Source: Penicillus capitatus
Taxonomy: Eukaryota > Plantae > Chlorophyta
Assembly: GCA_965649825.1 (NCBI GenBank)
Contig: OZ287697.1
Coordinates: forward strand, 372,001 to 436,000
Direction: 5' to 3'
Length of the DNA stretch: 64,000 nt
Below, in pieces: positions 31,307 to 56,069 of the stretch (its first letter is position 1; each line of letters begins with the position of its first letter). The notes beneath the pieces are model-generated. The model had not been told where the DNA came from. It saw nothing but the letters and a program-made list of their open reading frames with translations, and did no database searches. Position numbers and translations under genes: made by a program.

Positions 31307-33952
31307 ATGATCGCTCGCTCGGTGACACGACTCTGTGCCACAAAACAGAGCACTTCGCACAGAAGCCCCGCAATCGTCTCTTCAGTGACGTCGCGGGCAA
31401 ATGTCAGAAACCAGAAAGTTTCCCGACGGCATTTTGCCCTTGTGGCCGCCACTTCGACGCTTGTGATCGATAACTATGACAGTTACACCTATAATCTCTG
31501 CCAACTCATCGAAGAGACCCATGATCGTGTGCATACTTAAGTCAAACGCCATGTGTCACAGATTCTGTGCTTTGCCAGGGGCGCCTCTTGTCGTCTTGAA
31601 CGATGCCTGTTCAATTGAGGAGCTCGAAGAGATGGTCGTGGCCAATAGTATTCGATCCATCGTTATCTCTCCTGGCCCTGGAGGACCGTATCATCCCAGA
31701 GATATCGGTGGACGCTGTCCGATGTCACACTTGTGGGGTCAAAAGTGTGACATCTAGGAATCTGTGCGGAAGTTGTGCGTGCGTTTCCCCATCTGCCGAT
31801 TCTGGGCGTCTGTCTTGGACATCAGATCTTGGGAATGGTATATGGAGGGGAGATCTGTCGTGTGTCGCCTGTCCACGGACGGCGCTCGAGCATCCGACAT
31901 AACGGACACCCTCTGTTCCGTGCGATTCCTTCCTGTCCCGATTACCAAGTCGTCCGGTATCACTCTCTGGCAGTGGAAGGAAGCTCTTTACCGTCTTGTC
32001 TGCGGCCGATTGCCTGGACAAGTGGCGGAAGTTGTACAGTAAAGAGTGAGAAAGTGCGAGGCGCCGAGGAGCGTGTGTTGATGGGACTGGCACACAGGAG
32101 TGCACCGCATTACGGTGTTCAGTTTCATCCGGAGAGCATCGGCAGCCGTTACGGTAGGCAGCTTCTCACCAACTTCCAATCTCTCACACATTCCATCCCG
32201 TTCACACCGCGCGCCGCCACCTGCCGTATTGTCAGACGTCCAGAGAAAGAAGCTGAGAGGAAGCCAACGCTTGGCGTCGTCTGGAAGAAGATACGGGCGA
32301 ACAAGATCGACACCGATGCCCTCTTCGACCATCTCTTTGGTCAAAACGGATCGGACGATACCTTCTGGTTGGACAGGTCTGTGATGTGACGTTTCTTCTG
32401 CGATGATCATCACACATGGATGGATGGATCTTTAGTGCGGCACAAGAACGCTGTCGGTTTTCTTTCATGGGCGGACGAGAAGGCCCTTTGTGGAGACGCC
32501 TGAGCTACCGACTGGCTTCATCCTCGTCTGGCGATCTGACAGTGACCGATCGAGAGGGAGCAGAGGAGACATGGTCTGGCTCGCTGTGGGATTTCCTGAA
32601 TCAAGAGATCGATACCTACCGAGCAGCAGCTTCTGCAGAGCTTCCGTTCAATTTCTGTGGCGGGTAAGTGCCCTCGAAGGATGAAGCGTACATGGACCGA
32701 ATCCCTGCTGGCGAAGGTGGATTGGGTACTTTGGCTATGAACTTAAGGCATTGTGTGGCGGTCAGCTCGTACATCCATCCTCGACCCCCGACGCCGCCTT
32801 CTTCTTTGCGGATCGTTTTGTCGCCGTCGATCATCAACTGAATGAGATCTACTGTGTGGCTGTCTACCTTCTTAACCGTCATGATCTTTGCGACGATACC
32901 GAGAGATGGACGTCAGCAACACTGGAGCAGATCTCCTGCTTCCTGCAGCAAGAAGTGCCTCGTCCAGAGCCGTGTTGTCAAGGCGGAGGGGGACAGCATA
33001 TGAGTTTCTCCCTGCATCGTTCGCCATCTCAATACGCGGCAGATGTGCATCGTTGTCTGGAATTGCTGCACGCAGGGGAGAGCTACGAGATCTGCTTGAC
33101 AAATCGTTATCAGAAGAAAAGAGTGCGAGGCTCGGATCGAGAGCTCTATCGTCATCTCCGACGACGCAATCCTGCTCCCTACGGTGCTTGGCTGAAATTT
33201 GGCACCGGCGTCGCGTCTCTGACCATCTGCTGCTCTTCTCCGGAGCGTTTTCTCAGAGGAGAGCGCGATCGGACTCTAGAGGCGAAGCCTATTAAGGGCA
33301 CGTCTGCCAGATCGATGGATCCCCTTATCGATCGCGCATCGAAAACGGCGCTTCAGAATTCCGAAAAGGATCAAGCAGAGAACCTCATGATCGTCGATCT
33401 GCTGCGCAACGATCTGGGCCGTATCTGTGAGGTCTTCTCCGTCACTGTCCCCTCTCTCATGGAGGTCCCCATCCACACTTGCCTCGATACCATGCACGCC
33501 TTGCTCGTGCCATACAGGTGGAGTCTTTTGAGACGGTACATCAGTTGGTGAGCACCGTTCAAGGAAAGCGACGGAAAGAGGTATCGATCGTTGATGCCAT
33601 CCGGGCTGCCTTTCCCGGTGGATCCATGACCGGCGCGCCCAAGATCCGAACGATGGAGATCCTGGATCGACTCGAAGGTCTCTCCCCAACCCGCTCATTC
33701 CTTATCTCCGTGCCTTTCCTGTCAGGTGCTCCGCGTGGTGTCTACTCTGGCAGTCTTGGTTATCTCAGTGTCAACGACACCTTTGATCTGAACATCGTTA
33801 TTCGTTCCGTCGTCCTAACGCACGACGACATCACGATCGGCGCTGGCGGCGCCATCGTACTGCAGTCCGATGCGGCAGATGAGTTCAGTGAGATGCAGCT
33901 CAAAGCGCGTGCCCTCATGGAAGCGATCGACTGCTGGGAAGAGCATTTCTAA
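31307..33952 (+). CDS. ADCS: Aminodeoxychorismate synthase, fused PabA-PabB, plastid type
   Basis: LVIDNYDSYTYNL, VISPGPGGP, ILGVCLGHQ and GVQFHPES (GATase); GESYEICLT, CSSPERFL, KPIKGT, EKDQAENLMIVDLLRNDLGR, FPGGSMTGAPKIRTMEIL and GAGGAIV (chorismate-binding domain). Confidence 0.93.
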
Positions 33953-34066: not shown

Positions 34067-35167
34067 TCAGACATTATTGTTGGCAAAGATGCATCTTGCC
34101 TGGTCGTAGATACCATACATAACTTCAAAGCAGTGATCGATGTGCAAAATCAGAGACTTTGTGATAAAGGCGCCTTTACCGGTGGTCGTGACCCAGGATC
34201 CCACCAGATCGCCTTTGGAGAAATCCATGACCACAGAATTCGAGTTATAGAAGATAAAAAACCAATAGATGGCAAAAAAGCCGCCACAGAAGAGAGCGAT
34301 GCCCAACAGGGCATAGATGTATATAACGGCACCCAAACCAAAAAAGATGATGCTGATGAAGAGGGCCCCAATGCCGCCCCACAAAAATCTGAAATTCGTC
34401 ACGCGTTGCACAGTGATGTGTCTCAAGTTCTCGTACAGAAAAGAAGCTTCGACGGTGAAGAGGTTCATTCCACAAAGCTTGCTGCGTTGTTTGATAACGA
34501 TACGTCGATGTGTGAGCATGATGTATGAGACGAGGTGATAGATCTGGAAGACATCGGCCAGCGATCCGGCGCAACGCAGCAGGACTTGCTCATTGTCCAA
34601 CGGCTTCAGACTACCGGCCGCCATCCAGGGGTCATTGGGATCTGTTGTGCTTGTCTGGGTGCGCGTCATCATGGCATTATCGACGAGAAATCCTTGCACC
34701 AGGCCCGGGGGGTCATGACCCGTTGTTGGCCTCGGGGCATTGTCCGCCTGTGAAGATGCTGTTGGTGAGGAGGAAGGGGGAGCTAGCGTTACAGGTGGCG
34801 GTGGATGATAGGTCGTTGGCGCTGCGTGTGGTGCGACTTGGCCAGCGACAGGAGAGGAGTCTGGCACTTGCGTCGACGGAGGTGGCGGTTGTGGTGGTCG
34901 GTGCCATGCTTCGGTGGGCTGTGACAAATAACGCGCCCGTTCCTCTAGAGACGCCCCCGATATTTTGTGCGCTTTCCCGCCGCCTCCGCCGCCTCCGCCT
35001 TGTCGTTGGTGGAGGTCCACGTCGAGTTCGAAATTGAAGCTGCTGGAAGTGGTGGTCCTTGCTTCCTGAGTCATCGGGGCTTCGTGCGGCAACGAGACAT
35101 TTTCGTTTGAGACGGGGACGCCATTCTCCGGGTCGAAACTATATGTCCCGCTTCCGTGTTCAGACAT
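34067..35167 (-). CDS. Membrane-hairpin PH/GRAM-like family member P1 (long Pro/Ser-rich N-terminus)
   Basis: LTHRRIV..EASFLYENLRHITV, two hydrophobic helices, VVMDFSK..SW..GAFITKSL; same motif order as P2-P8. Confidence 0.75.
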   Translation of the reverse strand: MSEHGSGTYSFDPENGVPVSNENVSLPHEAPMTQEARTTTSSSFNFELDVDLHQRQGGGGGGGGKAHKISGASLEERARYLSQPTEAWHRPPQPPPPSTQVPDSSPVAGQVAPHAAPTTYHPPPPVTLAPPSSSPTASSQADNAPRPTTGHDPPGLVQGFLVDNAMMTRTQTSTTDPNDPWMAAGSLKPLDNEQVLLRCAGSLADVFQIYHLVSYIMLTHRRIVIKQRSKLCGMNLFTVEASFLYENLRHITVQRVTNFRFLWGGIGALFISIIFFGLGAVIYIYALLGIALFCGGFFAIYWFFIFYNSNSVVMDFSKGDLVGSWVTTTGKGAFITKSLILHIDHCFEVMYGIYDQARCIFANNNV

Positions 35168-35379
35168 GAGAAAAAGGCGTTCAGTGAATGCGACAGGAAG
35201 GAAAAGTCACGGGAAGGCGTTGCTGAAGAGACGACGGTACCGGCGTCGCGTCAAAGGCGGTTTGAAAAATACACCGTCGCTTCGCTGTCGTTGCGATCAT
35301 CATTGCTCTCACCACGATCAAGACGACGCAAAAAAGAGTGAGATGTCATTTCAAACGCAGCCCAAAGTGTGAGAAATTT

Positions 35380-38300
35380 TCATTTGAGTGTGGCGTGGTA
35401 GAGCTCGATGTAATCCAATCCTGGTCGGTTCCAACTCCAGTCTTGCTCCATCACTCTTTTCTGCAATGCACGGAACCACGGCCGATCGTTGTACCACGCA
35501 TCGATCGCACGGTTCAGTGCATAGTCCAAATCTCCTGTACCCGTGCCCTACAGTTCGAGCATTTCGCACTCGAACCAGAATCTCACACTTTTGAAAAAGT
35601 GATTACCGAAAAGGCAAATCCATTGGTGGCATCGACGCCGTCATTGATGTAATCGGAAGAGCCTTCGATCTCCCACGCGGCACGATCTTTATCAAATTCC
35701 ACATCGAAGACGGTATCCCGCAAGCCGCCGGTGTGACGCACGACGGGGATAGAACCGTATCGCATAGCAATCATCTGCGTGAGACCGCAAGGTTCAAACA
35801 TCGACGGCACGAGAACGATATCGGAGGCAGCGTAGATCAGATGCGACAACGGTTCGTCAAAGGCGAAGCAGAAACGAACGTTGGAGCCAGCATAGCCCAA
35901 GGAAGTGGCCAGTCCTTCGAAATCTGCCTGGATCTTGGGATCAGGGGCGGATCCCAAAAGGACAAAGACGCCGCCGCGTTCGAGCACACGCCACGCGGCG
36001 TGTTTGATGAGATTCACTCCTTTCTGTGCCGTGAGACGCGAGACGACACTGACCAGCGGTGCCTCTCTGGCGCCATCGATGCCAATTCTGTTGGCCAGGG
36101 CCATTCGCGCAGCTTGTTTGCCCTCTTCTAGTGTCGACGCATCGAAGCCTTGCGGCAAAAACTGATCGTTTTCTGGATCCCAGATCTCTGTATCGATGCC
36201 GTTGCGGATGCCCATGAACTTCCCGACGTTTGGCGCAATGGCGGCGTTGCTGCCCACTTCGAAGGCATACGTCGGCGAGACCGTCGTAAATCTCTGCGAG
36301 TAATGCGCCGCCTCGCCGATCTGAATCTGGCCGTAGTTAAGATTGTGGATGGTGAAAACGACCCGTGGCTTCCACAGACCCCAATGGTGATACTCTTCCC
36401 AGTAAGCTTTGGCGATGCCCGCCGTCGGCCAGTCATGACAATGGAGGATGTCTGGCTGACGACCGGACATCAAGAGAAACTGCAACGCCGCACGATTGAA
36501 GAAATCGAAGCGCTCTCCATCGTCTGTGCGACCATAGACGCTGTTGACACTGAACATGTGATTCTTGGGCTCGATGAAAAACACACGGAGGCCTTCGACC
36601 ATCTGCGTCGTCACATAGATCTGCGTCCCGCCCCATTCGTACTCGCAATCGTACTGCAGATTTGTCAGTAGCGGTGAACTGTTAAAGAAATCAAATCTAG
36701 AAAAGGTGTGATAAAGTGTGAGATAACGAACGGTATGGGCTGCTTACCGTGGCAAGATGACCTCGACCAGATGGCCCTGTTCTTTGACAGCTCTGCCTAG
36801 CGATGTCACCACATCGCCCAGTCCACCGACCTTGGCGATCGGCGCCATCTCGACAGAGACGTGGACAATGTGAAGGGGCGGTTCCTTGGCCAGGGATCCC
36901 GTAATGGGGATATGGTAATCAAATCCACCACGGTTGTCGTACGATCCAGGACCGTCCTCGACGTCTGCAAAGACGAAATCCATCATGAAAACGTCGACAG
37001 GGATGTCCACCGTCGCCCTCCAGTGATTCCCTCCATCTCCAGGGGGCTGCATCGCGATGGGGCCCAGCTTCTTTCGGTGGGACCAGCGATTCCAGCCGCC
37101 AGTAAGGTAGAGCTGTTCTTTGCCGTTGAGGCAGGTGTCGTTCGGTGAGTAGTAGATCGTCACCTTCTCGCCAGCTTCCAGCACTGGCGGATCGGTGAAG
37201 AGGACGTGCTTGATTTGGCGGCGGCCGACTGCCATGGCACGATCCATGGCAGCCCGTCGCAACTTCTCACGCCTCTCCTGTCGTTCTCTCACTTTCTGTT
37301 CCTTCTCTCGCCGTCTGTTTCGCTCAACTTCTGTCAATGGACCACTCAAACGTTCTAGCCACGTCTCCCACGACCCTGCCGATGCAGGAGGATGCACAAT
37401 GGCACGGTAGTCGAGTCGGTTGTTGTTATCAAAGGCATCGCCGTAACAGAAAACGAAATTCAGTGCGGCTGCATCGATGGGGATATCCACTTCGGCACTC
37501 CACAGATGGTTCTCTCCTATGACGTGCGTCATCTCATAGTCCCGTGCCTCTTGCCATCCATTCATGCCAATCTTGAGCGTGAGGTTATCCGAGGGCGAAA
37601 TCTTGAGATGCGCCAGTCCTGCCGATTTGCTATCGTAGAGCACCGTCACCCGTTTCCCTGCGACGGCTGGCGGCTGCATCTTCCAAATCATCACGCCCGC
37701 GTCGTTCATCAGCTCATCTGTTCCACCTGTCAGCGAGGCACGACACAGGTAGGTGAGACACATTGTAAGGGGATGAATAGACCCACCCGCTTGCCATTCC
37801 TGATAGTGGGCCTTCAATTCGCCGATCTTCCAATTGGCTTTGTCTGAATCTTCCTTCTCCAACTGCTTCTGTTGTCGTCGCTCGGCTTCATCGGCTGCCT
37901 CTTCGGCTTCGGCCATACGACGGTCCATATCGGCTGCTGCTCGGGCATTGGCACCATCCATCCATTCATCCCGAGTCGTCCCCCAATGGACGGGAGACAA
38001 AAAATCTTGTCCGTAGTTGTTATCAAATGCCCCTTCGCCATCCGTGAACACAAAGTTCATCTCGTAGCTCTCCTGAGGAACCAAGAAACTGCAAAACCAC
38101 CAATCGGACCCATCTTCCCTCGGTGCAGCTGTCGGCTCAAGAGTGAGCGTCTCTTTCTCCAGTTCCCATTCATTAAACGCACGGATCATCTTAACCGTAG
38201 GACGGAATTTGAGCGATTCGCTGACGCCTTTGTTAAAGTACACAGCACAGTGTGCTCCGGCGACGGGCACTTCAGGGATCGAAAACCAAAGCCATTCCCC

Positions 38301-38636
38301 ACGTCCATCTGCTAACTCCACCACATCGTGATCTTCAAACTCCATCTCAGCCGCCGCAACTTTCGCCTCTTTCTCCGTTTCGATGCCGTTCGGAGCACCC
38401 TTCTCAGACGATGCGCCTTTGTCCAGTGCCTCCGAGAGTTTGGAGAAGGAAAAGACTCTGTGCTTCCCTCCTCCGCCTGTCATCACCACCTCCGGGGTCA
38501 CCTTCTTGACAGCTTCCTCTTTCGAAGATGGAATGCTATCGACAGCCTCTCCCGTTTCCACGATCTCATGATCGGCTGCCAGGATACCCTTTCTGCGTCG
38601 TGTCTTCATTTTGGAGTGCTTTTTTGGCACAGCCTA
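35380..38636 (-). CDS. SSIII: Soluble starch synthase III (CBM53 repeats + GT5 catalytic domain); 5' exons upstream of 38636 unresolved
   Basis: Three CBM-like repeats (FDNNYGQDF, FDNNNRLDY, YDNRGGFDY); VEMAPIAKVGGLGDVV, ILHCHDW, VFTIHNL, SRLTAQKG and PSMFEPCGLTQMIAMRYG; last exon ..MEQDWSWNRPGLDYIELYHATLK* ends at 35380. Confidence 0.92.
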
Positions 38637-39457
38637 TGTCCAGATCTCTGCAAATGCGCTGAGGAATGATGATATCCCACGCACTTCTCTCCGTTTTTCA
38701 TTTTCCTGGAAGATGTGTCCTGGATCGTCGCCGCCTCTGCCACCAGATGATGTGACACCCCCCTGTCACCTTCAAACGGTAAACACCGAGCTCACTGGAA
38801 GGATCCTACCGTTGATAAAGATGTGACTTTGACACGGCGGAGGCGACGGGGCCGTACATACATATGCCTGTCAATAAATGATGCCCCTTCTGCCATGCAG
38901 CGTCGTCCGATCGCCAGACGTCCCGTCATTCCTTGACCACACCATAACTTGCATGTCGTTAAGGGAAGGCTTTACTGGGAAATGCTCTTTTTGGGAAGGA
39001 AGCGCTCGTCGCACGTGGCCTCGCGACTCTGCCGTACAATTTCTGGTGCGGAACAAACTTCAAGACGAGCGGCGTCAAAGATGAGCCTTACGTGCGAGGA
39101 GAATAGCTGTGACGATGCGAGCGCTTTCATCGCGAAGAGCCCGTGTTCTATGTTTGATCAATCGGCCCGCTTCATCTACGGCGCTTAATGCACAGCCACT
39201 ACTGCAACTGTCACATCACACCAACGTCGACGCAACACAAGGGAAAACAGACAGTGAGGACATGAAACGTTCGGCAAACGGTTAGAACGGGAACGAACAT
39301 AAATCCCGGTGCAGCTGCAACCTCTTCCGCAGGGCTAAACGATTTGCGTTAAGACCAACGCCTTTGCGTTTATTTCTTCGCCTTCGGCCCTTCAGAATGG
39401 AAGCGATGAATATCCAGACAGTACGTTATCCGTACCCTCGTCCACCAATCCGTATCG

Positions 39458-40183
39458 ATGCTCAAGGGGACGGCACTCGCTTCTCGAGGAGAGACGTCTC
39501 AGCGTCCAGAGCAAGACACCCAAAGCGAACAACAATCCACTGACGTGCGCGTTGCCGCAGGTCTCTGTCTTTGCTCGAATCCAAATCCTCACACTTTTGC
39601 AATAGCAGATATTCTGGATCTGTTAACAGGAGAACACCTGCTGTCCAGTTATAGAGGCGTTGATTACAAATGCTTTGGAGACAATTGCCTTATGGCCCGG
39701 CGAGACACCATCTGGCTGACCAATCGCCGCATCGTTATTCAGGAGACGATGACTGTTCTCGGATTACGTGTGGTCTCATCACAAGCGTCCTTTCGATACA
39801 AGGACCTGCAGCATCTCTCACTCAAAATTGACTACCGTCTGAAATTTCTCTTTGTTACTGCCGTGAGTCTCTATGGCCAATCGGAACTCATTGGACGAGA
39901 CAACCACTTTCTCGCGTTTCTGGGAGTGATACTCTTCATCATTGGCGTCCTGTGCTTTCTCTACTATCTAGCCAAGTTCTTCTTGAAAGAGGAACTGCAT
40001 TTGGATTTCTACAAGGAGGAGACGGTGAATACTTGGTTGTATCTGCTCGAAGGGTTCTTTCGCCGTCGATATGGATCGTCCATTACAAAGAGCTTGAATC
40101 TCACACTGGAAGACAGCTACGCCGTCATCAAGGAACTCTACGAACACGATCTCACTCAATTTGCCGAAGACAAAATCGAATAA
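39458..40183 (+). CDS. Membrane-hairpin PH/GRAM-like family member P2
   Basis: LLTGEHLL..WLTNRRIVI..ASFRYKDLQHLS..2 TM..LHLDFYKEETVNTW..GSSITKSL..LYEHDLTQFAEDK. N-terminal exon structure uncertain. Confidence 0.8.
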   Translation: MLKGTALASRGETSQRPEQDTQSEQQSTDVRVAAGLCLCSNPNPHTFAIADILDLLTGEHLLSSYRGVDYKCFGDNCLMARRDTIWLTNRRIVIQETMTVLGLRVVSSQASFRYKDLQHLSLKIDYRLKFLFVTAVSLYGQSELIGRDNHFLAFLGVILFIIGVLCFLYYLAKFFLKEELHLDFYKEETVNTWLYLLEGFFRRRYGSSITKSLNLTLEDSYAVIKELYEHDLTQFAEDKIE

Positions 40184-40416
40184 CTTGTCGACCTAAATCG
40201 AAAACCCGATGTGGCCCAACGCCCTTTGTTCTCACTCAAAAATGATGTGCCGTGTCAGACGCTCTTGTATCTCTGTACCGGTAACAAGTCATTGGTAAAA
40301 AGTGTGATCTCACATGCAGTCGATTCTCACGAAAATAGGGTGGTCATTCCTACTAGGCAACGACGAGGCAACCGCAAGACATATTTCTATAAACGCGAAC
40401 TTCTCTAAGAACGACG

Positions 40417-41232
40417 TTGCCTTTCACAACGCCTTCTGCCTTCACTCACCCTTCCCTTCGTTACATGGCGAATACCGGAACTCAGATACCGTCTGAACCA
40501 ACGTCAGAAAGAGTCCGTGATAGACCAAGCTCTTCATCCCTAACCGCCGGGCAGTCCGCCGTTCTTCCTTCCGCGCCCGTTATTCGTTCGTTGCCCTCTC
40601 CTCTCTTCCCGACCTCCTTTCCTTTTTGCCGTTTAGGACATCACACTCCTCTGGCATTGCTACCGGGCGAAGATCTCATTCTATCGGCCGGAATCAAAGA
40701 CAGTTGGAGGGTCAGCCTTACACATCTGCCTTACATCTTGACAACCATACCGACGATTCGAATCACGGATCGTCGTATCATCATCCAAGTGAAGAAGAAA
40801 TTTCTGGGGATCACGTTCTACATGAAGGAAGAGTCCTTCAACTGTGATGACCTTCAACAGCTCTCTCTGCGGAGTTCCTTGGATTTTCCTCGCGGTTTCT
40901 TCTCTCTGTTGCTCTTCGTTGGGGTGATCGTCGTGACTGCACTCAAGCTTGCGCAATCTATCTGCTTAGCTTTCCTCATTTCTGCTATTCTAGTCTCCCT
41001 CGCTGCTGTCGTGAACACTGCTTCTAACAGCACGTTAAATCTGGATTTCTACAGAAATGAGACCGTGCATTCGTGGCTGCCTTTTCTGGGATTTGGAGCT
41101 GGGGCATTGAGACACGGCTCATCGATTCGGAAGAAAATTGAAATGCCAACGGGCGAATGCATGTCCTGTCTTATTGTACTTTACGAGCACGACAAGACAC
41201 AGTTCGCCGAAGACAAGAGAACGCAAGAATGA
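40417..41232 (+). CDS. Membrane-hairpin PH/GRAM-like family member P3
   Basis: LLPGEDLI..ITDRRIII..EESFNCDDLQQLS..2 TM..LNLDFYRNETVHSW..GSSIRKKI..LYEHDKTQFAEDK. Start likely at MANTG; a short 5' intron is possible. Confidence 0.8.
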   Translation: MPFTTPSAFTHPSLRYMANTGTQIPSEPTSERVRDRPSSSSLTAGQSAVLPSAPVIRSLPSPLFPTSFPFCRLGHHTPLALLPGEDLILSAGIKDSWRVSLTHLPYILTTIPTIRITDRRIIIQVKKKFLGITFYMKEESFNCDDLQQLSLRSSLDFPRGFFSLLLFVGVIVVTALKLAQSICLAFLISAILVSLAAVVNTASNSTLNLDFYRNETVHSWLPFLGFGAGALRHGSSIRKKIEMPTGECMSCLIVLYEHDKTQFAEDKRTQE

Positions 41233-41639
41233 GACAGAATTCACCCACTTCTCTAAGAGCTATTCTATTGTGACCATTATCTCGAGATGACTTCATCTCA
41301 TGCTGTCGAGCAAACCGCATTATCACCGCAGTTGTACATGACGCGGCGGACGGTTGATATGAGGTTGTAGCACGTGAGAAAGGGTGAAAGTCTGAGTGTG
41401 GGTTCTGTTTTGGGAGTGTCGTTGTAATACATTGGTGAACGAGGTTGCAGTCGTTACGAGGTAACAGGTTCCGTGTCGATAATCTTTTCGTAAGTGGAAT
41501 GTCCAATGCAGCGCCGTAGGCACCAACGATGGAATCTGTCGTGCGACACGGTAGCATTTATCAAAGGACCCAAACAACACGTCCTATAGCATCTGCGGGC
41601 ATCACACGTGTGAGAAGCATCCACTGTATAGAACACTGA

Positions 41640-42335
41640 ATGAGCGGTGTAGGTGTTTTCCCTGGCTTTGTTTGTTTGCCTGGGGAGAGGATTTTTCTGG
41701 CGTGCGACTCAAGCACATACTGCGATTCCTTGACAACGGCCATGAATCTGCATACTAGATGCGATGCTTCCTACTTCTGTTGTTTTATGTGTTATTGCCT
41801 ATGCCCCCCTTTCTCTTGTTGTTGCGCATCATGTGTCCCTTCTTCTCGTTGGAGGGTGACTCTCACCGATAGACGCATCGTCATCGAGGAAACAGTCAAA
41901 TTTCTCTGCATTCCTGTCATTACTGTCCAAGAGTCTTTCAGATACAAGGACCTCCAACATGTCTCTGCGCAGAAGGATTTGGATTTCCTTAGAGCGACGA
42001 CTGGATTTGCACTTCTTTCTTTCGCTGTACCGTGGGCGTTTGTTCTTTTTCCGTTGGGAATTATGTTGGCCATGCCCTTTCTCATCACTGCTGTGATTTT
42101 TTGGTTCTTTGCATGGATGAACACACAGAGGCTAAGAACTCTGACCCTCGACTTCTACAAGAAGCAGACCGTACAGTCATGGCTTCCGTTTATGGATTCG
42201 GTGCTCACGCCAGTAGTCATTGGCTCAACAATTCGAAAGCACATCCGATTGCCACCTCCTGTCTGTCGTGCCATCATGCAGTTGATCTACGACAACGATC
42301 TGACACAGTTCGCTGAAGACAAGGACGAATTGTAG
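41640..42335 (+). CDS. Membrane-hairpin PH/GRAM-like family member P4 (Cys-rich insert)
   Basis: CLPGERIF..LTDRRIVI..ESFRYKDLQHVS..2 TM..LTLDFYKKQTVQSW..GSTIRKHI..YDNDLTQFAEDK. A first exon from ATG ~41529 is possible. Confidence 0.8.
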   Translation: MSGVGVFPGFVCLPGERIFLACDSSTYCDSLTTAMNLHTRCDASYFCCFMCYCLCPPFSCCCASCVPSSRWRVTLTDRRIVIEETVKFLCIPVITVQESFRYKDLQHVSAQKDLDFLRATTGFALLSFAVPWAFVLFPLGIMLAMPFLITAVIFWFFAWMNTQRLRTLTLDFYKKQTVQSWLPFMDSVLTPVVIGSTIRKHIRLPPPVCRAIMQLIYDNDLTQFAEDKDEL

Positions 42336-42447
42336 CGTCTCACTCTTTTAAGTAATGGTCGAGTCTCATGCGCCAATCTAGCATTACATCAAAACGAGCA
42401 TCATTCAGCGCCACGCGTTTCAAAGATAAGAGACCGCGCACGCCTCT

Positions 42448-43257
42448 TTGTCTGCCTCGCATCGAAAGAGTGAGACGCGTAGAGAAACGAAAACCACGTA
42501 CTCAAAGAAGGAAACTATTACCGCATCTTTCTGGTCTCCTCTCTTGAAGGCGTATGACAGTCGCCGCGGCCGAAACATGGAACACATTTCGTCGCTGCCA
42601 AACGAGACAGTTCTACACCGCTTTACAACATCGTCCTATGTGAACGGAGAAGAGGTCTCTGTTTATTTTTGCTTCCTGAGTTTTCTGTGGACACTGCATC
42701 TCACCGATCGTCGTATTGCCATACGAGTCGTCAAGAAGCTCTTCGGATTCTCGTTCCACGAGAGGGAAGAGTCTTTCAGATACAAGGACCTGAAACATGT
42801 TTCCATTTCGACAAATATCGCCTACTGGAAATTCTTCTTCAGTCTGTTCTCTTTGACAACTGTCCTTTGCATCGTGGATGTCATTCGATATCTCAGTGGT
42901 GACACTGAGAATGGATCTGACATTTCCTTTTTTTCGACTGCTGTATTCGAAATGTTTGCCATTGTGGAGATGATCTTAGTCCTTGTTGGGGTCGTTCTAT
43001 CATACGTTCTGTTCGTTATGGCTTTGGTGGAGTCTTTTTACTTCAAGAGCGTTAGTTTAGACTTTTATAAGAAGGAACGTGTTGAGTCATGGCACTTCTT
43101 CGCTGCGTATACCGGTCGATTTGGATCGCCCACGACAAGAACTTTGAGATTCTCTACTGAGCAATGCCATGCGATTGCGAAGGCGCTGCACGAACACGGC
43201 AAAACACAGTTATTGGACGATTCAGTGAGCTCAAATCCGTCGCGAACAATAGAGTGA
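42448..43257 (+). CDS. Membrane-hairpin PH/GRAM-like family member P5
   Basis: SLPNETVL..LTDRRIAI..EESFRYKDLKHVS..hydrophobic segments..VSLDFYKKERVESW..GSPTTRTL..LHEHGKTQLLDD. Start uncertain. Confidence 0.8.
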   Translation: MSASHRKSETRRETKTTYSKKETITASFWSPLLKAYDSRRGRNMEHISSLPNETVLHRFTTSSYVNGEEVSVYFCFLSFLWTLHLTDRRIAIRVVKKLFGFSFHEREESFRYKDLKHVSISTNIAYWKFFFSLFSLTTVLCIVDVIRYLSGDTENGSDISFFSTAVFEMFAIVEMILVLVGVVLSYVLFVMALVESFYFKSVSLDFYKKERVESWHFFAAYTGRFGSPTTRTLRFSTEQCHAIAKALHEHGKTQLLDDSVSSNPSRTIE

Positions 43258-43760
43258 CGTCAACAATATGCATCGTGACATTTTGCTGTTAGATTTTGTG
43301 CCATACATTCGATGTACTCTCCATAGTCCTGTTGGCAGTGGAAGCGTTAAACCTTTATCACACTTTCTCACACTTTATCTGCAGCAAAAAGTCTCCTCTT
43401 TTCAGATCTGTCCATGCAAAGACGTCCATACGCCATTCACGAAGACGATCAAGAAGCTCCAATGATGTCATACAGTCTACGGCGGAGATAGATCGGCCCA
43501 AAGGCTTAGCGCTTTGCAACACTTTCAAGCAAGGGCGCTGAGAATTGGAAGTTGCAGATGGTATCAGGTCCTTTACTTGTTTTAACTTCAGTGTGTGTCA
43601 TTGAGCTCATTGCCACGTTGCCTGTCACCATGAACAGTGTGCCCGAGTGCTTAACCGTTTCTGCTATGAAGCGGCCTGTCTTGTCGACAACGTTCTTTCG
43701 CCGAAGCACGCATCTCACTCCTCTTCGCGTTTTAAGGAAAGGAGACCCAGAATCCCCGCG

Positions 43761-44575
43761 ATGCAAGAACAGCAACCCATTGCTGCTAAACCGTCTTTTG
43801 CCCACAATGCCAACTCTTCACAAACCGAAACACGGGAAGGTCACTCTCCCGAAGGACCGCTAACTGCGACAACGGCGCCGGATTGCCCGGATTCAGTTTC
43901 AGCATCCATGTCTGCCGGGTGCCGACAACCAGGTTTACTGCTGCCTGACATTTTGAGCGCTTCGTGAAATGTGTTGCAGTGAGCCTCGAAGGCACGGCGC
44001 TGTTGCCCGATGAGATCGTTCTGGTGTCCTACAGGAAACAGAAGTTTTCGCCCGAATTCCTCACTTTTCCGCCGTTCCTCTGGATTTGGAAAACCGTAGA
44101 TGTCATACATCTCACCAATCGCCGCATCGTCATCAAGAAAGCGAGGAACTTTTTTTCCATGCCCATCACATCAAAGGAACAGTACTTTCGCTACAACGAT
44201 CTTCAACACATCTCTGTCCGTAGCAACGTCGATTTTCTGTATCTGATTGTATCCATTGCTCTCGGTCTTTTGCTCGGAGGATGTCGTCTGTTAAAAATCG
44301 ATACGTGCCAGAACACGTCGTTTCTTTGGGGGTTCTCTTTCTTGAGCGCCGCCATTTTCCTCAGCGGATGGATCGCTGCGTTTGTAGGGAGTCATTTGGA
44401 TTTGGATTTTTCCAAAAGGCAGACAGTCCATTCTTGGTCGATTCTGAAGGGCTGGGGACTCTTGGCCTTAAAAATCGGCTCGTCCACGACACAGTCCGTC
44501 CGATTAGCCCCTGAGGACTGCTATGAAGCAATGTACTGGCTCTACCAATACCCAAAAACGACATTCTCTTGGTAG
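43761..44575 (+). CDS. Membrane-hairpin PH/GRAM-like family member P6 (255 aa)
   Basis: Phase-1 intron 43933-43979 joins MQEQQ..RQP to VSLEGTALLPDEIVL..LTNRRIVI..QYFRYNDLQHIS..2 TM..LDLDFSKRQTVHSW..GSSTTQSV (768 nt, in frame). Confidence 0.78.
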
Positions 44576-44971
44576 CACAAAGACGGTGGCGACATTTGAT
44601 GATGCTGACTGGCTTTAATGCCTACGCAAACGACGGCGCCGCCGATGCTCGACCTTTTTTGGCAGCTGATCTGTCGTGGATCGTAATAGTAAGACGGCTG
44701 TATTGCGAGGCTTCTGGATGAGGACCGTGAAAGGAGGTCACTGTCGACGATGTGACACTCGACGTGTAGCAGGTCGACAGTTGGTTACAATCATTGGTCT
44801 TAAGTCATCAAACGGTTAGTTTTCAAAATCTTTGCATCATCGATACGTCCGACCCACGTTTACATTTCCTATCCGACACGCCGAGGCATTTCCCACGCGG
44901 TTACCTTGACGTGCTCCGCCACTCGACATAAACGCGTCTGGCTCTTTTTCGTCACCCTCTACCTTCTAAAG

Positions 44972-46529
44972 ATGTCTACCACTCAGAACCCGGTGCGCAA
45001 CTTTGTGTGACCGTCTCCAGCGGATTGCACCTGACTGCTTGGATTGTCTCTTAGGCTAAAGACACCGATACTGCGGCAACGATTGACGCCGGCGAAGAAT
45101 GTGCGGGTAAGGGCAAGAGCACTACCCCCGCCGGCGAAGCGTCGGTTACCGTCGGCACGGACTCGCCCGGCGTTCGCCTTCAAGACGAGAGACTTGACAA
45201 TACGTTCAAAGGAATTGACCTCGAATGCTACAACCGCATCGGCATTCTCTCAACGCACGACGAAATCTCTCTGACAAACAGACGCATCGCTACGAAGCGC
45301 AATGTCAAACTGTGTGGCCTGTCGATCATGAACACGGAGGAATCGTTCCTCTATCAGGACCTCCAACACATCTCTGTCAAATCCGAACACAGATTTGGAT
45401 TTCTCGTCGGGAGTCTGTTGGGTCTGTACGCCCAGTCTGGGCTTCTCTTGGAAGCGGGAGCATTCTATGTTTTCCTCGCCGTGGTCGTCATTATCCTCAG
45501 CATCCTTGCACTGTTGTATTTTCTCCGTGGTTTGTGTGACCGTGGGGCGCTCTCATTGGATTTTCATAGAAAGGGCGTGGCGGATCGATGGTATTGGCTT
45601 TCCAATCCTATCCTCAGGGCTAAAAATGGATCGTCTTTGACAAAGACCGTTCATCTGAACAGAAATGATAGGGCCACGGTGACAAGAATGCTCTATGAAC
45701 ACCCACTGTCCAATTTTGCTATGTCTGACTTCCATCCCGGAGAGAGTAGCCAGGTAAGCAATTCATCACATAATGTCGTCCTCCGTTTCACTCCACCTCT
45801 TTGTACTGTCATGCAGAAAGCCTCCAATGTCGAGATAGATCCACTGCCATCACAAGAGGACAAAGACACTAAGGAAGGTAATCACACACCGTCGTCTTCA
45901 ATGCGCAAAAATAATAACCGTTGAGTTGAGTAGATGATGGTCCACAACTTATGTCTGGTGAACGCATTGAGAGAGCATTCGGTGGCGTGGAGATCAGTGG
46001 AAAGTGTGATGCTGGTTTGGGTATCACAGAGTTGGCGTCGATGGAAGATCGAATTTATCTGACGAACAAACGCATCTTCATCAGGAAAAAGCGCTCGCTC
46101 TGTGGCGTCCCCATTTTTTCCTCCGAAGCGTCGTTTCTCTTTCAGGATCTCCAACATATTTCTGTCAAGATGGAACGCAAGAGTCGATTTGCTGTGACGG
46201 GACTTGGGTGTCTTGTGGTCGGTATCATCTGGAATGCGTTAACATTCAGCGATGCCGGAACGGCGCTGTCGGTGACACTCATGATCGTTGGCATTCTGCT
46301 GTTGTTTTCCATCTTCCAGATCTTCGTTGCCAAACCGATGCTGCATCTGGATTTCTACAAAAAGGCGACAGTGAATCAATGGCTCTTCGGATTGGACGCC
46401 ATTTCCGTACTCAAGGAAGGATCTGCCGTTACTGAAACGGTCCATCTCAACACGGATGATTTGGTGTCCATCACACGTATGCTCTATGCACACCCACTCG
46501 CTCAGTATGTCGAAGATCGAGAACGTTGA
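44972..46529 (+). CDS. Membrane-hairpin PH/GRAM-like family member P7, predicted two-domain fusion (458 aa)
   Basis: Introns 44993-45054, 45754-45816 and 45878-45933 join ORFs 45328-45924 and 45951-46529 in frame (1377 nt). Each half has LTN(R/K)RI, SF(L)xQDLQHIS, two TM helices, LDF and GS-x-T motifs. Confidence 0.72.
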
Positions 46530-47274
46530 AAGCAGTTGCTAAGAATTTCGTTACGATATCTGTCGCTCAAAGACAGCCATACTTTCATCAATCGCTCTCC
46601 TGCTGCAAATGTCAAACGATTTCTATACTGTCTTTCTTCGATGGGTCTGTTTCTGCTATGCTGAGACGGGACAGGGAATTTGTGGAGGCTTATACCATAT
46701 CACGCATTTTTGCCGTTTATCTTATCCATTACTGACACTCGCTGTTTGCATCGCTCCCTCTCTTCAGCATATTGAAATATACTGAGGTGATTGTCTTTGG
46801 GTCGTTTTAACGATTTCTAGCTATAATCTCCTATCAATGTCTCTAAGTTTTTGAAGTAACCGTCACTGAGCTCATTCACCGTCCACGTGTACTCGCGTCA
46901 TGCTTACCTATAGACGGTGCATGTGCGTCGTTGACGAACATCTCACGAGCAGCTGCCCTCGACGGTTGTGTGTTCCGTCGGATAGTCATTGAGGTGACGG
47001 TTCTTGTTTAGAGATAAAAGTTCGCTCCGGGCATCCCCTCGCAGCTTATCATTTATTTGCTTTCTCTGTTCCTCACGCACTCTTCTGATTCGCGTTTCCG
47101 GTGAACCGTCGCGGAAGGCATTTCCAGCCACACTTTGGCGAGTTTTTTACAACTCTAAACCTGTCCTTCGACCAGTCAGTGTCCGAGACAACACTCAATT
47201 CACCGTAAGGACCGCCGCCGTACATACGACCTCTGACTTCGTTGGTGTAATGAACAGCATCCGACGTCAGAATA

Positions 47275-48018
47275 ATGGCACAGAGTTCTCGACCATCGCC
47301 GGAGACAAAAGCTCATGCATCACCGCCACTTACACAAGGTGCGCGACGTTCACAAACACACTTAAGCAACGCAGAACCGTTCATCACAGAGCATTGCACA
47401 ACCATCGCTCGGCATCCCGGAGAGAATTACATAGAGAGTTTTAAATCGCCCAGCTGCAGTCCTTGGTGCAGCCGGATGGTCACATTTGTGCTCACAGACC
47501 AAAGACTCGTTGTCAGAGAGGAGGTGACGGTGCCATGCTGCACGATGAGTTATACAGAAGAGTTCTTTCGCCTAAAGGACCTGCAACATATCTCTTTGAG
47601 CAAAGCTGGGATCCCCTTCATCTCTTCAATGTCCCTGCTACCTCTCCTTCTTCCGTTTTCCCCATACGGATTGGGCTTTTATCTCTTTGTAATCGGAATC
47701 CTTATCGCTGTTTTTACTTCTCCCGTCGCTGGTATCATATGCATTCTTTTTTGTGCCGCCCTCGTATCCATTGTCCTTGGTCGCAGTTTCTGTTGTCCAA
47801 GCGTCGAGGTTTCTGTTGATTTCTATCGTAAAGAAACTGTGAGATCATGGCTTTCAGAAGTTGTCGATATGCCCATCGTGGGGTTTTTTGTCTATCCATT
47901 CAGGGAAGGTAGCTTCACAAGCAAAACCATCAGATTAGATACTAAAAACGCTCACCAACTCGTCCAGCTTCTGTATGGTCACCCTCTGACGCAATACGCC
48001 GAAGACAGAACTGTCTGA
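47275..48018 (+). CDS. Membrane-hairpin PH/GRAM-like family member P8
   Basis: RHPGENYI..LTDQRLVV..EEFFRLKDLQHIS..TM helices..VSVDFYRKETVRSW..GSFTSKTI..LYGHPLTQYAEDR. Confidence 0.8.
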   Translation: MAQSSRPSPETKAHASPPLTQGARRSQTHLSNAEPFITEHCTTIARHPGENYIESFKSPSCSPWCSRMVTFVLTDQRLVVREEVTVPCCTMSYTEEFFRLKDLQHISLSKAGIPFISSMSLLPLLLPFSPYGLGFYLFVIGILIAVFTSPVAGIICILFCAALVSIVLGRSFCCPSVEVSVDFYRKETVRSWLSEVVDMPIVGFFVYPFREGSFTSKTIRLDTKNAHQLVQLLYGHPLTQYAEDRTV

Positions 48019-55900: not shown

Positions 55901-56069
55901 CTCGCGTTCACTCGATTCCATGGATTTATGGCACCACAGAGGTGGCACAAGTCTAGCTGGATACAGGCCCGTCCCGTGACGGATTCCATGTCGCGTTGTC
56001 TGAGTGGGCACGACGCAAGCAGCGCTCGTTCAACGTCACATCACACGAAACCGAATAACATACATCATG

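What the first reader, a model, noticed from the sequence alone, without database searches (positions are those of the whole stretch)
34067..48018. Tandem array of eight genes encoding a PH/GRAM-like domain split by a transmembrane hairpin
Seen: nine domain copies share the consensus L-x-P-G/D-E...LT(N/D)RRI...ESF-x-Y-x-DLQH(I/V)S-[two hydrophobic helices]-L-x-LDFY-x-K-x-TV-x-x-W...GS-x-(I/T)-x-K...LYEH-x-LTQ(F/Y)AED, with variable disordered N-termini. Seven genes are head-to-tail (39.4-48 kb); P1 is inverted on the far side of starch synthase III. The paralogues are very divergent, so the expansion is old and retained, and the conserved domain appears intron-free. Established: LxxGE, LTxxRI and IxxxDIxxI motifs typify GRAM and bacterial PH (bPH) domains. 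Inference: the membrane hairpin is inserted inside the beta-sandwich, with the last strands and the C-terminal helix after it, giving a membrane-embedded lipid- or protein-binding module that may oligomerise. I know of no characterised eukaryotic family with this topology, and a prokaryotic origin is possible.
Basis: partly seen in the sequence, partly recalled or inferred. Interest (0 to 1): 0.8.

Follow-up and report, generated by a model that had tools for sequence, protein, structure and literature searches.

The report
Algal membrane-anchored PH-like protein gene array
A green-alga genome fragment carries eight neighbouring genes (nine domain copies) of a very rare, unnamed protein family. 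A small PH-like beta-sandwich appears to be interrupted by a two-helix membrane anchor, an unusual design shared with an equally unnamed bacterial family, and its function is still unknown.

Summary
Nine paralogous domain copies lie at 34067-48018. P1 is inverted beyond starch synthase III, and P2-P9 run head-to-tail. P7 and P8 join into one two-domain gene through two small introns that a sister genome conserves, giving eight genes.

The family is real and under purifying selection (dN/dS 0.12-0.49). It is extremely rare: 48 cluster representatives among 1.84 billion. The named members are all green algae, and no Pfam, NCBIfam or PDB sequence match is significant.

AlphaFold2 (pLDDT 78-80) predicts five strands, a helical hairpin, two more strands and a C-terminal helix. 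A conserved Glu...Thr-x-x-Arg triad sits where bacterial PH and GRAM domains keep their buried Glu-Arg pair. Foldseek gives no significant match, although PH-like domains have the highest probabilities. The PH assignment is therefore likely, not proven.

A homologous bacterial family with the same split layout exists, mostly in Actinomycetota and Bacillota (hhalign 97-98%). It too is unannotated and only weakly resembles Pfam DUF6232.

The array copies evolve fast and expand separately in each lineage. Only P1 keeps conserved synteny. Function is unknown. My best guess is a cytosol-facing, membrane-stapled and possibly S-acylated module that oligomerises. I rate it a new variant of a known kind.

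The parts
34067..35167 (-). P1 gene (366 aa). It has a Pro/Gly-rich low-complexity N-terminus, and the conserved domain is encoded at 34067-34621. It is the slow-evolving, synteny-conserved subtype.
   Evidence: ORF. HMM E=2.8e-61. Hydrophobic hairpin encoded at 34250-34390. Orthologues lie in L002/L004 (83% identity, dN/dS 0.12) and in L011 (44%). In all of them the gene sits between SSIII and ADC synthase.
35583..38630 (-). Starch synthase III (CBM53 plus GT5/GT1), read as two ORFs about 130 bp apart. It is a conserved neighbour of P1 and not a family member.
   Evidence: Pfam annotation. Best named relatives are Haematococcus (62%), land plants (55-59%) and Chlamydomonas (52%). It serves as the yardstick for evolutionary rate (dN/dS 0.04).
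39458..40183 (+). P2 gene (241 aa), the first gene of the head-to-tail array and the copy that was modelled.
   Evidence: called gene. HMM E=1e-74. Hairpin at 39842-39976. AF2 model. Orthologue 81% identical in L002.
40465..41232 (+). P3 gene (255 aa counted from the ATG at 40465; the open frame starts at 40393).
   Evidence: Hairpin at 40888-41016.
41640..42335 (+). P4 gene (231 aa). It carries a 12-cysteine insertion at the tip of the beta1-beta2 hairpin.
   Evidence: Hairpin at 41988-42122. Cys-rich segment.
42577..43257 (+). P5 gene (226 aa from the ATG). It has an enlarged, acidic loop between the two hydrophobic helices.
   Evidence: Hairpin region at 42826-43020. Orthologues carry 149-204-residue hairpin regions containing acidic insertions.
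43761..44575 (+). P6 gene. The domain exon is 43980-44575, and its open frame has no ATG before the domain. A putative first exon is 43761-43932, with a 47-nt intron at 43933-43979.
   Evidence: ORF. HMM E=4e-58. The splice model is one of several in-frame options and has no RNA support. Hairpin at 44237-44386.
45055..46529 (+). P7-P8 gene encoding two domain copies. Exons are 45055-45753, 45817-45877 and 45934-46529. The exon carrying the start codon lies upstream and was not identified.
   Evidence: An AG acceptor lies at 45053-45054, and there is no ATG before 45328. In-frame joining through two small introns is conserved in L002, where the P8 orthologue lacks an ATG. Hairpins at 45397-45531 and 46185-46322.
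47275..48018 (+). P9 gene (247 aa), the last and fastest-evolving array member.
   Evidence: Hairpin at 47608-47763. Orthologue 58% identical, dN/dS 0.49.

Best explanation
The locus encodes eight small integral-membrane proteins (nine domain copies) of an undescribed family in an uncultured green alga.

Predicted anatomy. Each domain is most likely a bacterial-PH/GRAM-type PH-like beta-sandwich. Strands beta1-beta5 come first, then a helix-loop-helix hydrophobic hairpin of about 45 residues inserted in the beta5-beta6 loop, then beta6, beta7 and the capping C-terminal helix.

Inferred topology. The two halves must meet to form one fold, so both ends of the hairpin must lie on the same side of the membrane. 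There is no signal peptide-like N-terminus, the N-terminal tails are long and polar, and both hairpin flanks carry Lys/Arg. The sandwich therefore probably sits on the cytosolic face, stapled directly to the bilayer.

Inferred second anchor. The cysteine clusters at the beta1-beta2 tip, which is the membrane-contacting loop of classical PH domains, are probably S-acylated.

Mechanism, by analogy only. Soluble bacterial PH domains form rings through their free beta-edges, and membrane-bound bacterial PH proteins are needed for peptide export. By analogy, these proteins may assemble into homo- or hetero-oligomeric membrane rings that scaffold or gate transport. The most conserved motifs (ESFRYxDLQH and LDFYKxxTVxSW) would then form a site at the membrane surface.

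Evolution, shown. There is one slow, synteny-fixed copy (P1) and a fast-evolving array that expands lineage by lineage.
For: - Real, constrained genes. There are 1:1 orthologues in a sister genome with dN/dS 0.12-0.49, against 0.04 for SSIII. Distant members come from transcriptomes of Chlamydomonas leiostraca and Pyramimonas obovata.
- Layout. The AF2 full-domain model has pLDDT 78, with strands 17-29, 32-44, 47-56, 59-69 and 73-81, helices 84-101 and 106-129, strands 133-142 and 163-169, and a helix at 173-185. The hairpin-deleted model has pLDDT 80 and pTM 0.76.
- Hydrophobic hairpin. Hydropathy shows one or two hydrophobic peaks in this stretch in every copy, and its length is conserved at about 40-56 residues in most of the 42 aligned members.
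- PH signature. Glu15, Thr44 and Arg47 are conserved in at least 90% of sequences. In the model they fall before beta1, at the end of beta2 and at the start of beta3. This matches Glu31, Thr47 and Arg50 of PHb1, an ion pair shared with GRAM, GLUE and TFIIH PH domains (PMC2817789).
- Fold search. The highest-probability Foldseek matches are PH-like: hSac2 0.94, Exo84 0.93, ECT2 0.66 and Sin1 0.44.
- Pfam. The only recurrent weak hits are DUF6232 (8 of 42 members) and bPH_3 (3 of 42).
- Bacterial relatives. The bacterial family with the same layout gives hhalign 97.9% (E=3e-13). The pre-hairpin part alone gives 94.4% (E=1e-7). Wider alignments give 96.9%, including the post-hairpin strand and helix.
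- Cysteines. Cysteines occur at the beta1-beta2 tip in most of the 42 members, and many carry clusters.
- Precedents. PHb domains form rings, and membrane PHb proteins have been hypothesised to be pores or transporters (PMC2817789). DdE and DdF are required for enterocin export (PMC8657885).
Against: - No Foldseek match is significant. The best E-value is 0.03 with the hairpin and 0.11 without it, TM-scores are at most 0.47 and rmsd is about 10 A.
- No Pfam PH-clan model reaches its threshold, even with the hairpin removed. There is no GRAM hit.
- No PDB sequence match has E below 0.6.
- The alignments behind the models are shallow (9-14 sequences).
- Helix 1 is only marginally hydrophobic, and in the P2 subtype it is poor (approximate Hessa scale). 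A re-entrant or interfacial hairpin is therefore possible.
- Side of the membrane, acylation, oligomerisation and any transport role are all inference.
- Bacterial gene neighbourhoods give no functional clue.
Confidence: 0.55

Rival explanations
1. The soluble part is not a PH-like fold. It is a different or new beta-meander (for example a calycin-like barrel) that only mimics the PGE/TxxR motifs. On this reading the family is a structurally novel two-pass membrane protein.
For: Foldseek finds nothing significant. The best E-value hit for the hairpin-deleted model is the VtrC beta-barrel (E=0.11), and all TM-scores are below 0.5. The strands are unusually long, and the hairpin-deleted model shows about ten strand segments. 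All Pfam PH-family hits are sub-threshold.
Against: The full model has the strand order and count of a PH domain, seven strands plus a capping helix. The Glu/Thr/Arg triad falls at the equivalent structural positions. The highest Foldseek probabilities are PH-like domains. The recurrent weak Pfam hits are to bPH families rather than other folds.
Confidence: 0.25
2. The hydrophobic stretch is not a bilayer-spanning hairpin. It would be a monotopic or re-entrant wedge, as in oleosin, caveolin or reticulon-type hairpins, targeting the proteins to ER subdomains, lipid droplets or plastid envelope or plastoglobule surfaces.
For: Helix 1 is marginal or poor as a transmembrane segment in most array copies (approximate apparent dG from about 0 to +8). 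The loop between the helices is short in most members. The fold requires both ends on one side in any case.
Against: Helix 2 is strongly hydrophobic and 19-25 residues long in every copy. P1-type proteins have two good segments. P5-type proteins carry 149-204-residue hairpin regions with large acidic insertions between the helices, which fits an exposed loop on the far side better than a buried turn.
Confidence: 0.2
3. The array is a set of decaying or spurious ORFs, or a recently acquired foreign (viral or bacterial) island, rather than functional host genes.
For: P6 and P7 lack an in-frame ATG in their domain ORFs. Gene callers miss or truncate several copies. The family is absent from almost all sequenced organisms.
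Against: All nine copies keep open frames and the conserved motifs, and all have dN/dS below 0.5 against 1:1 orthologues. Splice sites that restore the frames are conserved between genomes. GC content is like the surroundings. The flanks are host housekeeping genes in conserved synteny. No viral relatives were found.
Confidence: 0.03
4. Functional rival: the proteins are not ring-forming transport scaffolds. The array copies would instead be rapidly diversifying membrane receptors or tags involved in biotic interactions or self/non-self recognition, with the variable N-terminal tails and variable loops as the working parts.
For: Array copies evolve fast (58-81% identity where SSIII is 96%; dN/dS 0.28-0.49). 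Tandem expansions are lineage-specific in two related algae. N-termini and the beta6-beta7 loop are highly variable.
Against: No site-level test for positive selection was done, and mean dN/dS is below 1. There is no hit to known defence families. The conserved motifs flank the membrane rather than sit in exposed variable regions.
Confidence: 0.2

Closest known systems
Bacterial PH (PHb/bPH) domains: Pfam bPH_1 to bPH_7, structures PHb1/PHb2 (Xu et al. 2010, PMC2817789)
   Same: The predicted seven strands plus C-terminal helix are shared. The conserved Glu before beta1 and the Thr-x-x-Arg at the beta2/beta3 junction are shared. Most bPH families are membrane proteins with a cytoplasmic domain. 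Weak bPH_3 and bPH_7 hits are seen.
   Different: According to Xu et al., most other bPH families are predicted membrane proteins. From memory, not tested here, their transmembrane helices lie outside the domain, as in YdbS/YdbT-type bPH_2. Here a two-helix hairpin sits inside the fold, in the beta5-beta6 loop. No bPH model reaches its threshold. The hosts here are eukaryotic algae.
Pfam DUF6232 (PF19744), an uncharacterised bacterial family
   Same: It is the most frequent weak Pfam hit for both the algal proteins (8/42) and their bacterial relatives (11/18 and 8/21). One match spans profile positions 3-114 of 117 across the pre-hairpin strands, the hairpin and the post-hairpin part, which suggests the same split layout.
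   Different: All scores are below the gathering threshold of 27.4 bits. The only listed bit scores are 18.7 and 15.3, and the best E-value is 6e-4 for bacterial and 0.02 for algal members. DUF6232 has no known function or structure, and no paper in the searchable library mentions it.
Unannotated bacterial family represented by P0047/P0052 (Arthrobacter, Sanguibacter, Corynebacterium, Bifidobacterium, Actinomyces, Collinsella; Bacillus and Niallia plasmids)
   Same: Homology is demonstrable: hhalign 97.9%, 96.9%, and 94.4% on the pre-hairpin part alone. The order of elements is identical: APGE, TNRR, PNTLLGIIPLG, hairpin, GG, helix.
   Different: Identity in the hhalign alignments is only 16-21%. 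The bacterial proteins are single-copy, often carry Q/P-rich tails, and some lie on plasmids or mobile elements. They lack the LDFYK..W and LYEH.LTQFAED motifs. All are annotated 'hypothetical protein'.
Eukaryotic GRAM domains and split PH domains (myotubularin GRAM-PH, Vps36 GLUE, PLC-gamma, syntrophin)
   Same: The LxxGE / LTxxR sequence logic and the buried Glu-Arg pair are shared with GRAM and GLUE. Split PH domains show that PH folds tolerate large insertions in loops. That last point is from my own knowledge and was not tested here.
   Different: There is no GRAM (PF02893) hit even at E<=10. To my knowledge, known split PH domains carry soluble inserts (zinc fingers, SH2/SH3, PDZ) at other loops, not a membrane hairpin.
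DdE/DdF PH-domain membrane proteins of leaderless-bacteriocin clusters (PMC8657885)
   Same: They are small membrane-bound bacterial PH-domain proteins with a demonstrated role: they are required for peptide export. They are the only functional precedent for membrane bPH proteins that I found.
   Different: No sequence relationship was tested or shown. No bacteriocin-like or ABC-transporter genes accompany the algal array or the bacterial relatives.

Membership tests
PH-like superfamily, bacterial-PH/GRAM type | Seven-stranded beta-sandwich of two sheets capped by a C-terminal amphipathic helix (PMC2817789) | tested here: inconclusive
   The AF2 model has seven strands and a C-terminal helix in the right order (pLDDT 78). 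Foldseek against the PDB gives no significant match: E>=0.03, TM<=0.47, with PH-like hSac2 and Exo84 at probability 0.93-0.94.
PH-like superfamily, bacterial-PH/GRAM type | Buried Glu on the loop before beta1, paired with a conserved Thr at the end of beta2 and an Arg at the start of beta3 (Glu31/Thr47/Arg50 in PHb1) | tested here: met
   E15 (PGE), T44 and R47 (LTxRR) are invariant or at least 90% conserved. The same residues are conserved in the bacterial relatives. In the model they fall before strand 17-29, at the end of 32-44 and at the start of 47-56. Physical contact in the model could not be measured.
PH-like superfamily, bacterial-PH/GRAM type | Significant match to a Pfam PH-clan model (bPH_1-7, GRAM, PH) | tested here: not met
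   The best hits are bPH_3 at E=0.016-0.14 and bPH_7 at E=7e-4 in one bacterial relative. All are below gathering scores. Removing the hairpin does not help, and there is no GRAM hit.
Pfam DUF6232 (PF19744) | Score at or above the curated gathering threshold (27.4 bits) | tested here: not met
   Algal members reach at best E=0.02 (8 of 42 hit weakly). For the bacterial relatives the listed bit scores are 18.7 and 15.3, and the best E-value is 6e-4.
bPH_2 / YdbS-YdbT-type membrane bPH proteins | Transmembrane helices N-terminal to, and outside, an uninterrupted bPH domain | tested here: not met
   In every copy the hydrophobic hairpin lies between the ESFRYxDLQH strand and the LDFYK strand, so it is inside the domain. 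There is no bPH_2 hit. The definition of the bPH_2 layout is from my own knowledge.
Two-pass (hairpin) integral membrane protein | Two hydrophobic helices long enough to span a bilayer, joined by a short loop | tested here: inconclusive
   Helix 2 qualifies in all copies. No dedicated topology predictor was available.
Oligomeric ring assemblies of PHb domains | Cyclic homo-oligomer formed by beta-edge extension (C5 or C12 rings in PHb1/PHb2) | not testable with these tools
   No multimer prediction was available. This is an analogy to PMC2817789 only.

The most novel reading that the evidence does not exclude
This would be a previously undescribed class of PH-like domain that is itself an integral membrane module. 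A transmembrane hairpin is inserted in the beta5-beta6 loop of a bacterial-type PH sandwich. The design is shared by an unannotated bacterial family (Actinomycetota and Bacillota, some copies plasmid-borne) and by a chlorophyte family that has expanded into fast-evolving tandem arrays. If the domains form rings as soluble bacterial PH domains do, the hairpins would line a membrane pore. That would give a new kind of small channel or export scaffold, and a clear case of a bacterial membrane-protein design shared with, or transferred to, green algae.
Probability: 0.3. Interest if true: 0.7.

Novelty: new variant of a known kind. Interest (0 to 1): 0.55.

Why it matters
PH-like domains are among the commonest membrane-targeting modules, but they are known as peripheral, soluble domains. 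A PH-like sandwich with a membrane hairpin built into one of its loops would extend what this fold is known to do. It would also link an unnamed algal family with an unnamed, partly plasmid-borne bacterial family and the uncharacterised Pfam DUF6232.

The locus gives nine natural sequence variants of the design in one 14-kb stretch, together with orthologues. That is a good starting set for structure determination, topology mapping and tests of oligomerisation.

For algal biology it flags a lineage-specific, rapidly evolving family of small membrane proteins whose function is entirely open. If the fold assignment fails, it is still a very rare, conserved membrane-protein family with no annotation anywhere.

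Tried and rejected
- Pfam and NCBIfam on all copies and on 42 family members: nothing significant.
- Pfam on hairpin-deleted sequences: only bPH_3, E>=0.04.
- PDB sequence searches with three profiles: only chance hits at E>=0.65, not pursued.
- Foldseek against the PDB with and without the hairpin, and against the viral BFVD library: no significant match.
- Rfam and tRNA scans of the window: nothing found.
- Viral origin: no related viral contigs for P2. The alignment-based scans could not run for lack of a conserved stretch.
- Defence or phage families (PADLOC, PHROGs): nothing meaningful.
- Conserved gene neighbours of the bacterial relatives: none beyond the family itself.
- Literature: no paper mentions DUF6232, the sample accessions, or a PH domain with a transmembrane hairpin.
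- Functional link to starch synthase: rejected as unsupported. Only P1 keeps the SSIII neighbourhood. The arrays in the related alga lie next to unrelated genes: a VWA/lectin gene, a tRNA synthetase fragment and an MFS transporter.
- Exact organism: not resolved. It is a Viridiplantae alga with no close named relative.
I reran it with the nine window-derived rows only.
Full report

Yes.
- P1 34067-35167 on the minus strand
- P2 39458-40183
- P3 40417-41232 (ATG at 40465)
- P4 41640-42335
- P5 42448-43257 (ATG at 42577)
- P6 43964-44575
- P7 (open frame from 45055) to 45924
- P8 45951-46529
- P9 47275-48018, all but P1 on the plus strand

The alignments reproduce the consensus L-x-P-G-E ... LT(N/D)RRI ... 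ESFRYxDLQHIS, then a hydrophobic stretch, then LDFYKxxTVxSW ... GS..TK ... LYEH.LTQFAED. Paralogues are 25-41% identical. BLASTP gives E=2e-35 for P2 vs P8 and E=4e-5 for P1 vs P9, among the least similar pairs. An HMM scan over all six-frame ORFs of the window finds exactly these nine copies.

**2. Gene structure.**

- Each domain copy lies in one uninterrupted ORF.
- P7 has no ATG before residue 92 of its frame, and it begins right after a pyrimidine-rich AG acceptor at 45053-45054. Its start codon must therefore lie in an upstream exon that I could not identify with confidence.
- Two small introns, 45754-45816 (63 nt, GTAAGC...CAG) and 45878-45933 (56 nt), join P7 to P8 in frame.
- In the sister genome the same two introns exist (60 and 56 nt). 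There the P7 orthologue's stop codon lies inside the first intron, and the P8 orthologue has ACG where the window has ATG.
- P6 also lacks an ATG before its domain. One plausible model uses a first exon at 43761-43932 and a 47-nt intron, but this has no RNA support.

**3. Where the window comes from.**

- The window is part of a 1.46-Mb contig of an ENA metagenome assembly.
- Its genes are eukaryotic and algal: a fused ADC synthase, starch synthase III with CBM53, a plastid-type sigma factor, three P450s and a HemN-like radical SAM enzyme.
- The SSIII catalytic domain is closest to unnamed metagenomic proteins. Among named proteins it is closest to Haematococcus (62%), land plants (55-59%) and Chlamydomonas (52%).
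- The organism is therefore a green-lineage alga with no close sequenced named relative.

**4. Are these working genes?**

- A sister genome, represented by two contigs of ERZ26696514 (L002 and L004), has the same nine copies in the same order, 1:1 orthologous. They are 58-83% identical, while SSIII is 96% identical.
- Nei-Gojobori dN/dS is 0.12 for P1 and 0.28-0.49 for the array copies, against 0.04 for SSIII. Selection is purifying but relaxed.
- Distant members come from transcriptomes, so the family is expressed somewhere.
- Spurious ORFs, pseudogenes or a foreign island are rejected.

**5. How rare is the family, and who has it?**

- A profile search of 1.84 billion cluster representatives finds only 48 proteins at E<=1e-3. 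The word-indexed search of 5.8 billion clusters finds eight.
- Named sources are Chlamydomonas leiostraca and Pyramimonas obovata (MMETSP transcriptomes) and Caulerpa lentillifera. These span three chlorophyte classes (class assignment from my own knowledge). The rest are environmental.
- A second related alga (runs SRR33785045/46; SSIII 89% identical) has at least eleven copies. Four are tandem on L003, four on L010, two on L009, and a P1-type gene on L011 sits in the same SSIII - P1 - ADC synthase - sigma factor order.
- Only P1 has a clear reciprocal orthologue there, at 44% identity. Array copies mostly pair best with copies of their own genome.
- There are thus two subtypes: a slow, synteny-fixed P1 type, and an array type that evolves by lineage-specific birth-and-death.
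The array is older than the split from the sister genome, but the family evolves so fast that divergence overstates age.

**6. Structure.**

- AlphaFold2 on the 14-sequence alignment gives mean pLDDT 78 and pTM 0.65. It predicts strands 17-29, 32-44, 47-56, 59-69 and 73-81, helices 84-101 and 106-129, strands 133-142 and 163-169, and helices 173-185 and 190-196.
- A model with the hairpin removed, built from window-derived rows only, has pLDDT 80 and pTM 0.76.
- Hydropathy finds one or two hydrophobic peaks in this stretch in every copy. Helix 1 is good in P1, P3 and P9, marginal in most others and poor in the P2 type.
- The hairpin region is 38-56 residues in most of the 42 aligned members. 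P5-type proteins differ: the window copy has 69 residues, and its orthologues have 149-204 residues with many acidic residues.

**7. Is it a PH-like fold?**

For:
- The strand count and order fit.
- Xu et al. 2010 (PMC2817789) describe the structural signature of bacterial PH domains. It is a buried Glu on the loop before beta1 (Glu31), bonded to the backbone of a conserved Thr (Thr47) and to an Arg at the start of beta3 (Arg50). The ion pair is shared with GRAM-PH, GLUE and TFIIH domains.
- In this family Glu15 (of PGE), Thr44 and Arg47 (of LTxRR) are the most conserved residues. In the model they fall before beta1, at the end of beta2 and at the start of beta3, with the same T-x-x-R spacing.
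- The highest-probability Foldseek matches are PH-like domains: hSac2 0.94, Exo84 Ral-binding PH 0.93, ECT2 PH 0.66 and Sin1 PH 0.44.
- The only recurrent Pfam hints are DUF6232, bPH_3 and bPH_7.

Against:
- No Foldseek match is significant. The best E-values are 0.03 and 0.11, and TM-scores are at most 0.47.
- No Pfam PH-clan model reaches its threshold, even after the hairpin is removed.
- There is no GRAM hit.
- No PDB sequence match is better than E=0.65.

I put the PH-like assignment at about 0.7. The split layout itself is more secure.

**8. Bacterial relatives.**

- The two weakest hits of the profile search (P0047 and P0052) are bacterial. One lies in a plasmid- or ICE-like context.
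- Their family occurs in Arthrobacter, Sanguibacter, Corynebacterium, Bifidobacterium, Rothia, Actinomyces and Collinsella. It also occurs in some Bacillota, Armatimonadota and Chloroflexota, and on Bacillus and Niallia plasmids. It is always annotated 'hypothetical protein'.
- The order of elements is the same: APGE, TNRR, PNTLLGIIPLG, a hydrophobic hairpin, a GG strand and a helix.
- Profile-profile comparison gives 97.9% (E=3e-13, 156 columns).
- The pre-hairpin part alone gives 94.4% (E=1e-7), so the signal is not just hydrophobic composition.
- Wider alignments give 96.9%, reaching through the post-hairpin strand and helix.
- Eleven of 18 and eight of 21 bacterial members weakly match DUF6232. 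One match covers profile positions 3-114 of 117 across the hairpin. DUF6232 probably has the same layout, but no score reaches its threshold.
- The split design therefore exists in bacteria, and a prokaryotic link is real. The direction and age of the link are not resolved.

**9. How it most likely works.**

Shown: small proteins with a predicted beta-sandwich interrupted by a hydrophobic helical hairpin, and conserved motifs that hug both ends of the hairpin.

Inferred:
- One fold needs both halves on the same side, so the hairpin must return to its starting side.
- The N-terminal tails are long and polar with no signal-like segment, and both flanks carry Lys/Arg. The domain is therefore probably cytosolic.
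- Cysteines, often clusters (CC to CCCC; twelve in P4, ten in P0020), occupy the beta1-beta2 tip in most of the 42 members. In classical PH domains this loop touches the membrane, so S-acylation as a second anchor is plausible.

By analogy only:
- Soluble PHb domains form C5 and C12 rings through free beta-edges, and Xu et al. proposed that membrane PHb proteins act as pores or transporters.
- The PH-domain membrane proteins DdE and DdF are required for export of enterocin DD14 (PMC8657885).

I therefore favour an oligomeric, membrane-stapled scaffold or gate. My confidence in that mechanism is low, about 0.25. The fast, lineage-specific evolution of the array copies keeps open a role in diversifying recognition.

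**10. Comparison with what is known, and novelty.**

- The family works like, and probably descends from, bacterial-type PH domains.
- It fails formal membership of every curated family tested: bPH_1-7, GRAM and DUF6232.
- It differs from known membrane bPH proteins by having the membrane segment inside the fold.
- To my knowledge, known split PH domains carry soluble inserts.
- I found no paper describing this layout.
- I rate it a new variant of a known kind. It is of moderate interest for fold evolution and algal cell biology, and its function is open.

Noticed in passing
window 1880-3034(+), 8759-9940(+), 52864-54018(-): Three cytochrome P450 paralogues (Pfam E about 1e-62 each) are scattered through the window. 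A P450 also lies next to SSIII in the related alga (L011 2631-3806). This suggests a second locally duplicated family.
   Followed up: no
window 35583-36614 and 36744-38630 (-); 31775-33952 (+): Starch synthase III and the GATase/chorismate-binding ADC synthase are each broken into two or three ORFs a short distance apart or overlapping. This is consistent with short introns like the 47-63-nt ones inferred in the array. Prokaryote-style gene callers therefore fragment the genes of this contig.
   Followed up: partly
L002 12982-13899 and L004 982-2064 (orthologues of P5, window 42577-43257): The hairpin regions of the P5 orthologues are 149-204 residues long and carry 29-37 acidic residues between the two hydrophobic helices. 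The window copy has 69 residues. This is a rapidly changing loop, presumably exposed on the far side of the membrane.
   Followed up: partly
window 41780-41870 (P4 residues about 48-76); also P0020, P0029, P0041: Dense cysteine clusters (up to 12 Cys in about 30 residues) are inserted at the tip of the first beta-hairpin. They are candidate S-acylation or metal-binding sites.
   Followed up: partly
L005/L006/L007 6001-6462; plasmid hits H1-H15: The bacterial homologue P0047 sits in an identical plasmid- or ICE-like block (DNA methyltransferase, primase, ParA-like ATPase) in several sequencing runs. Relatives are on Bacillus cereus-group and Niallia plasmids, so the bacterial family is partly mobile.
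   Followed up: partly
P0050 (426 aa) and P0051 (375 aa), distant family members: These are two-domain proteins with two copies of the strands-hairpin-strands unit, like the inferred P7-P8 fusion. Tandem fusion seems to recur in the family. Their source organisms are unknown (an MMETSP transcript and a Logan contig).
   Followed up: no
window 11573-12790(-), 51019-52059(+), 55859-56527(+): These are large ORFs (222-405 aa) with no Pfam match at E<=1e-3. They were not examined further.
   Followed up: no
bacterial relatives P0061, P0064-P0073 (alignment A7 columns 270-400); P0074-P0076: Many bacterial homologues end in long Gln/Pro-rich low-complexity tails. Two carry a C-terminal SHOCT domain and one an N-terminal zinc ribbon.
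   Followed up: no
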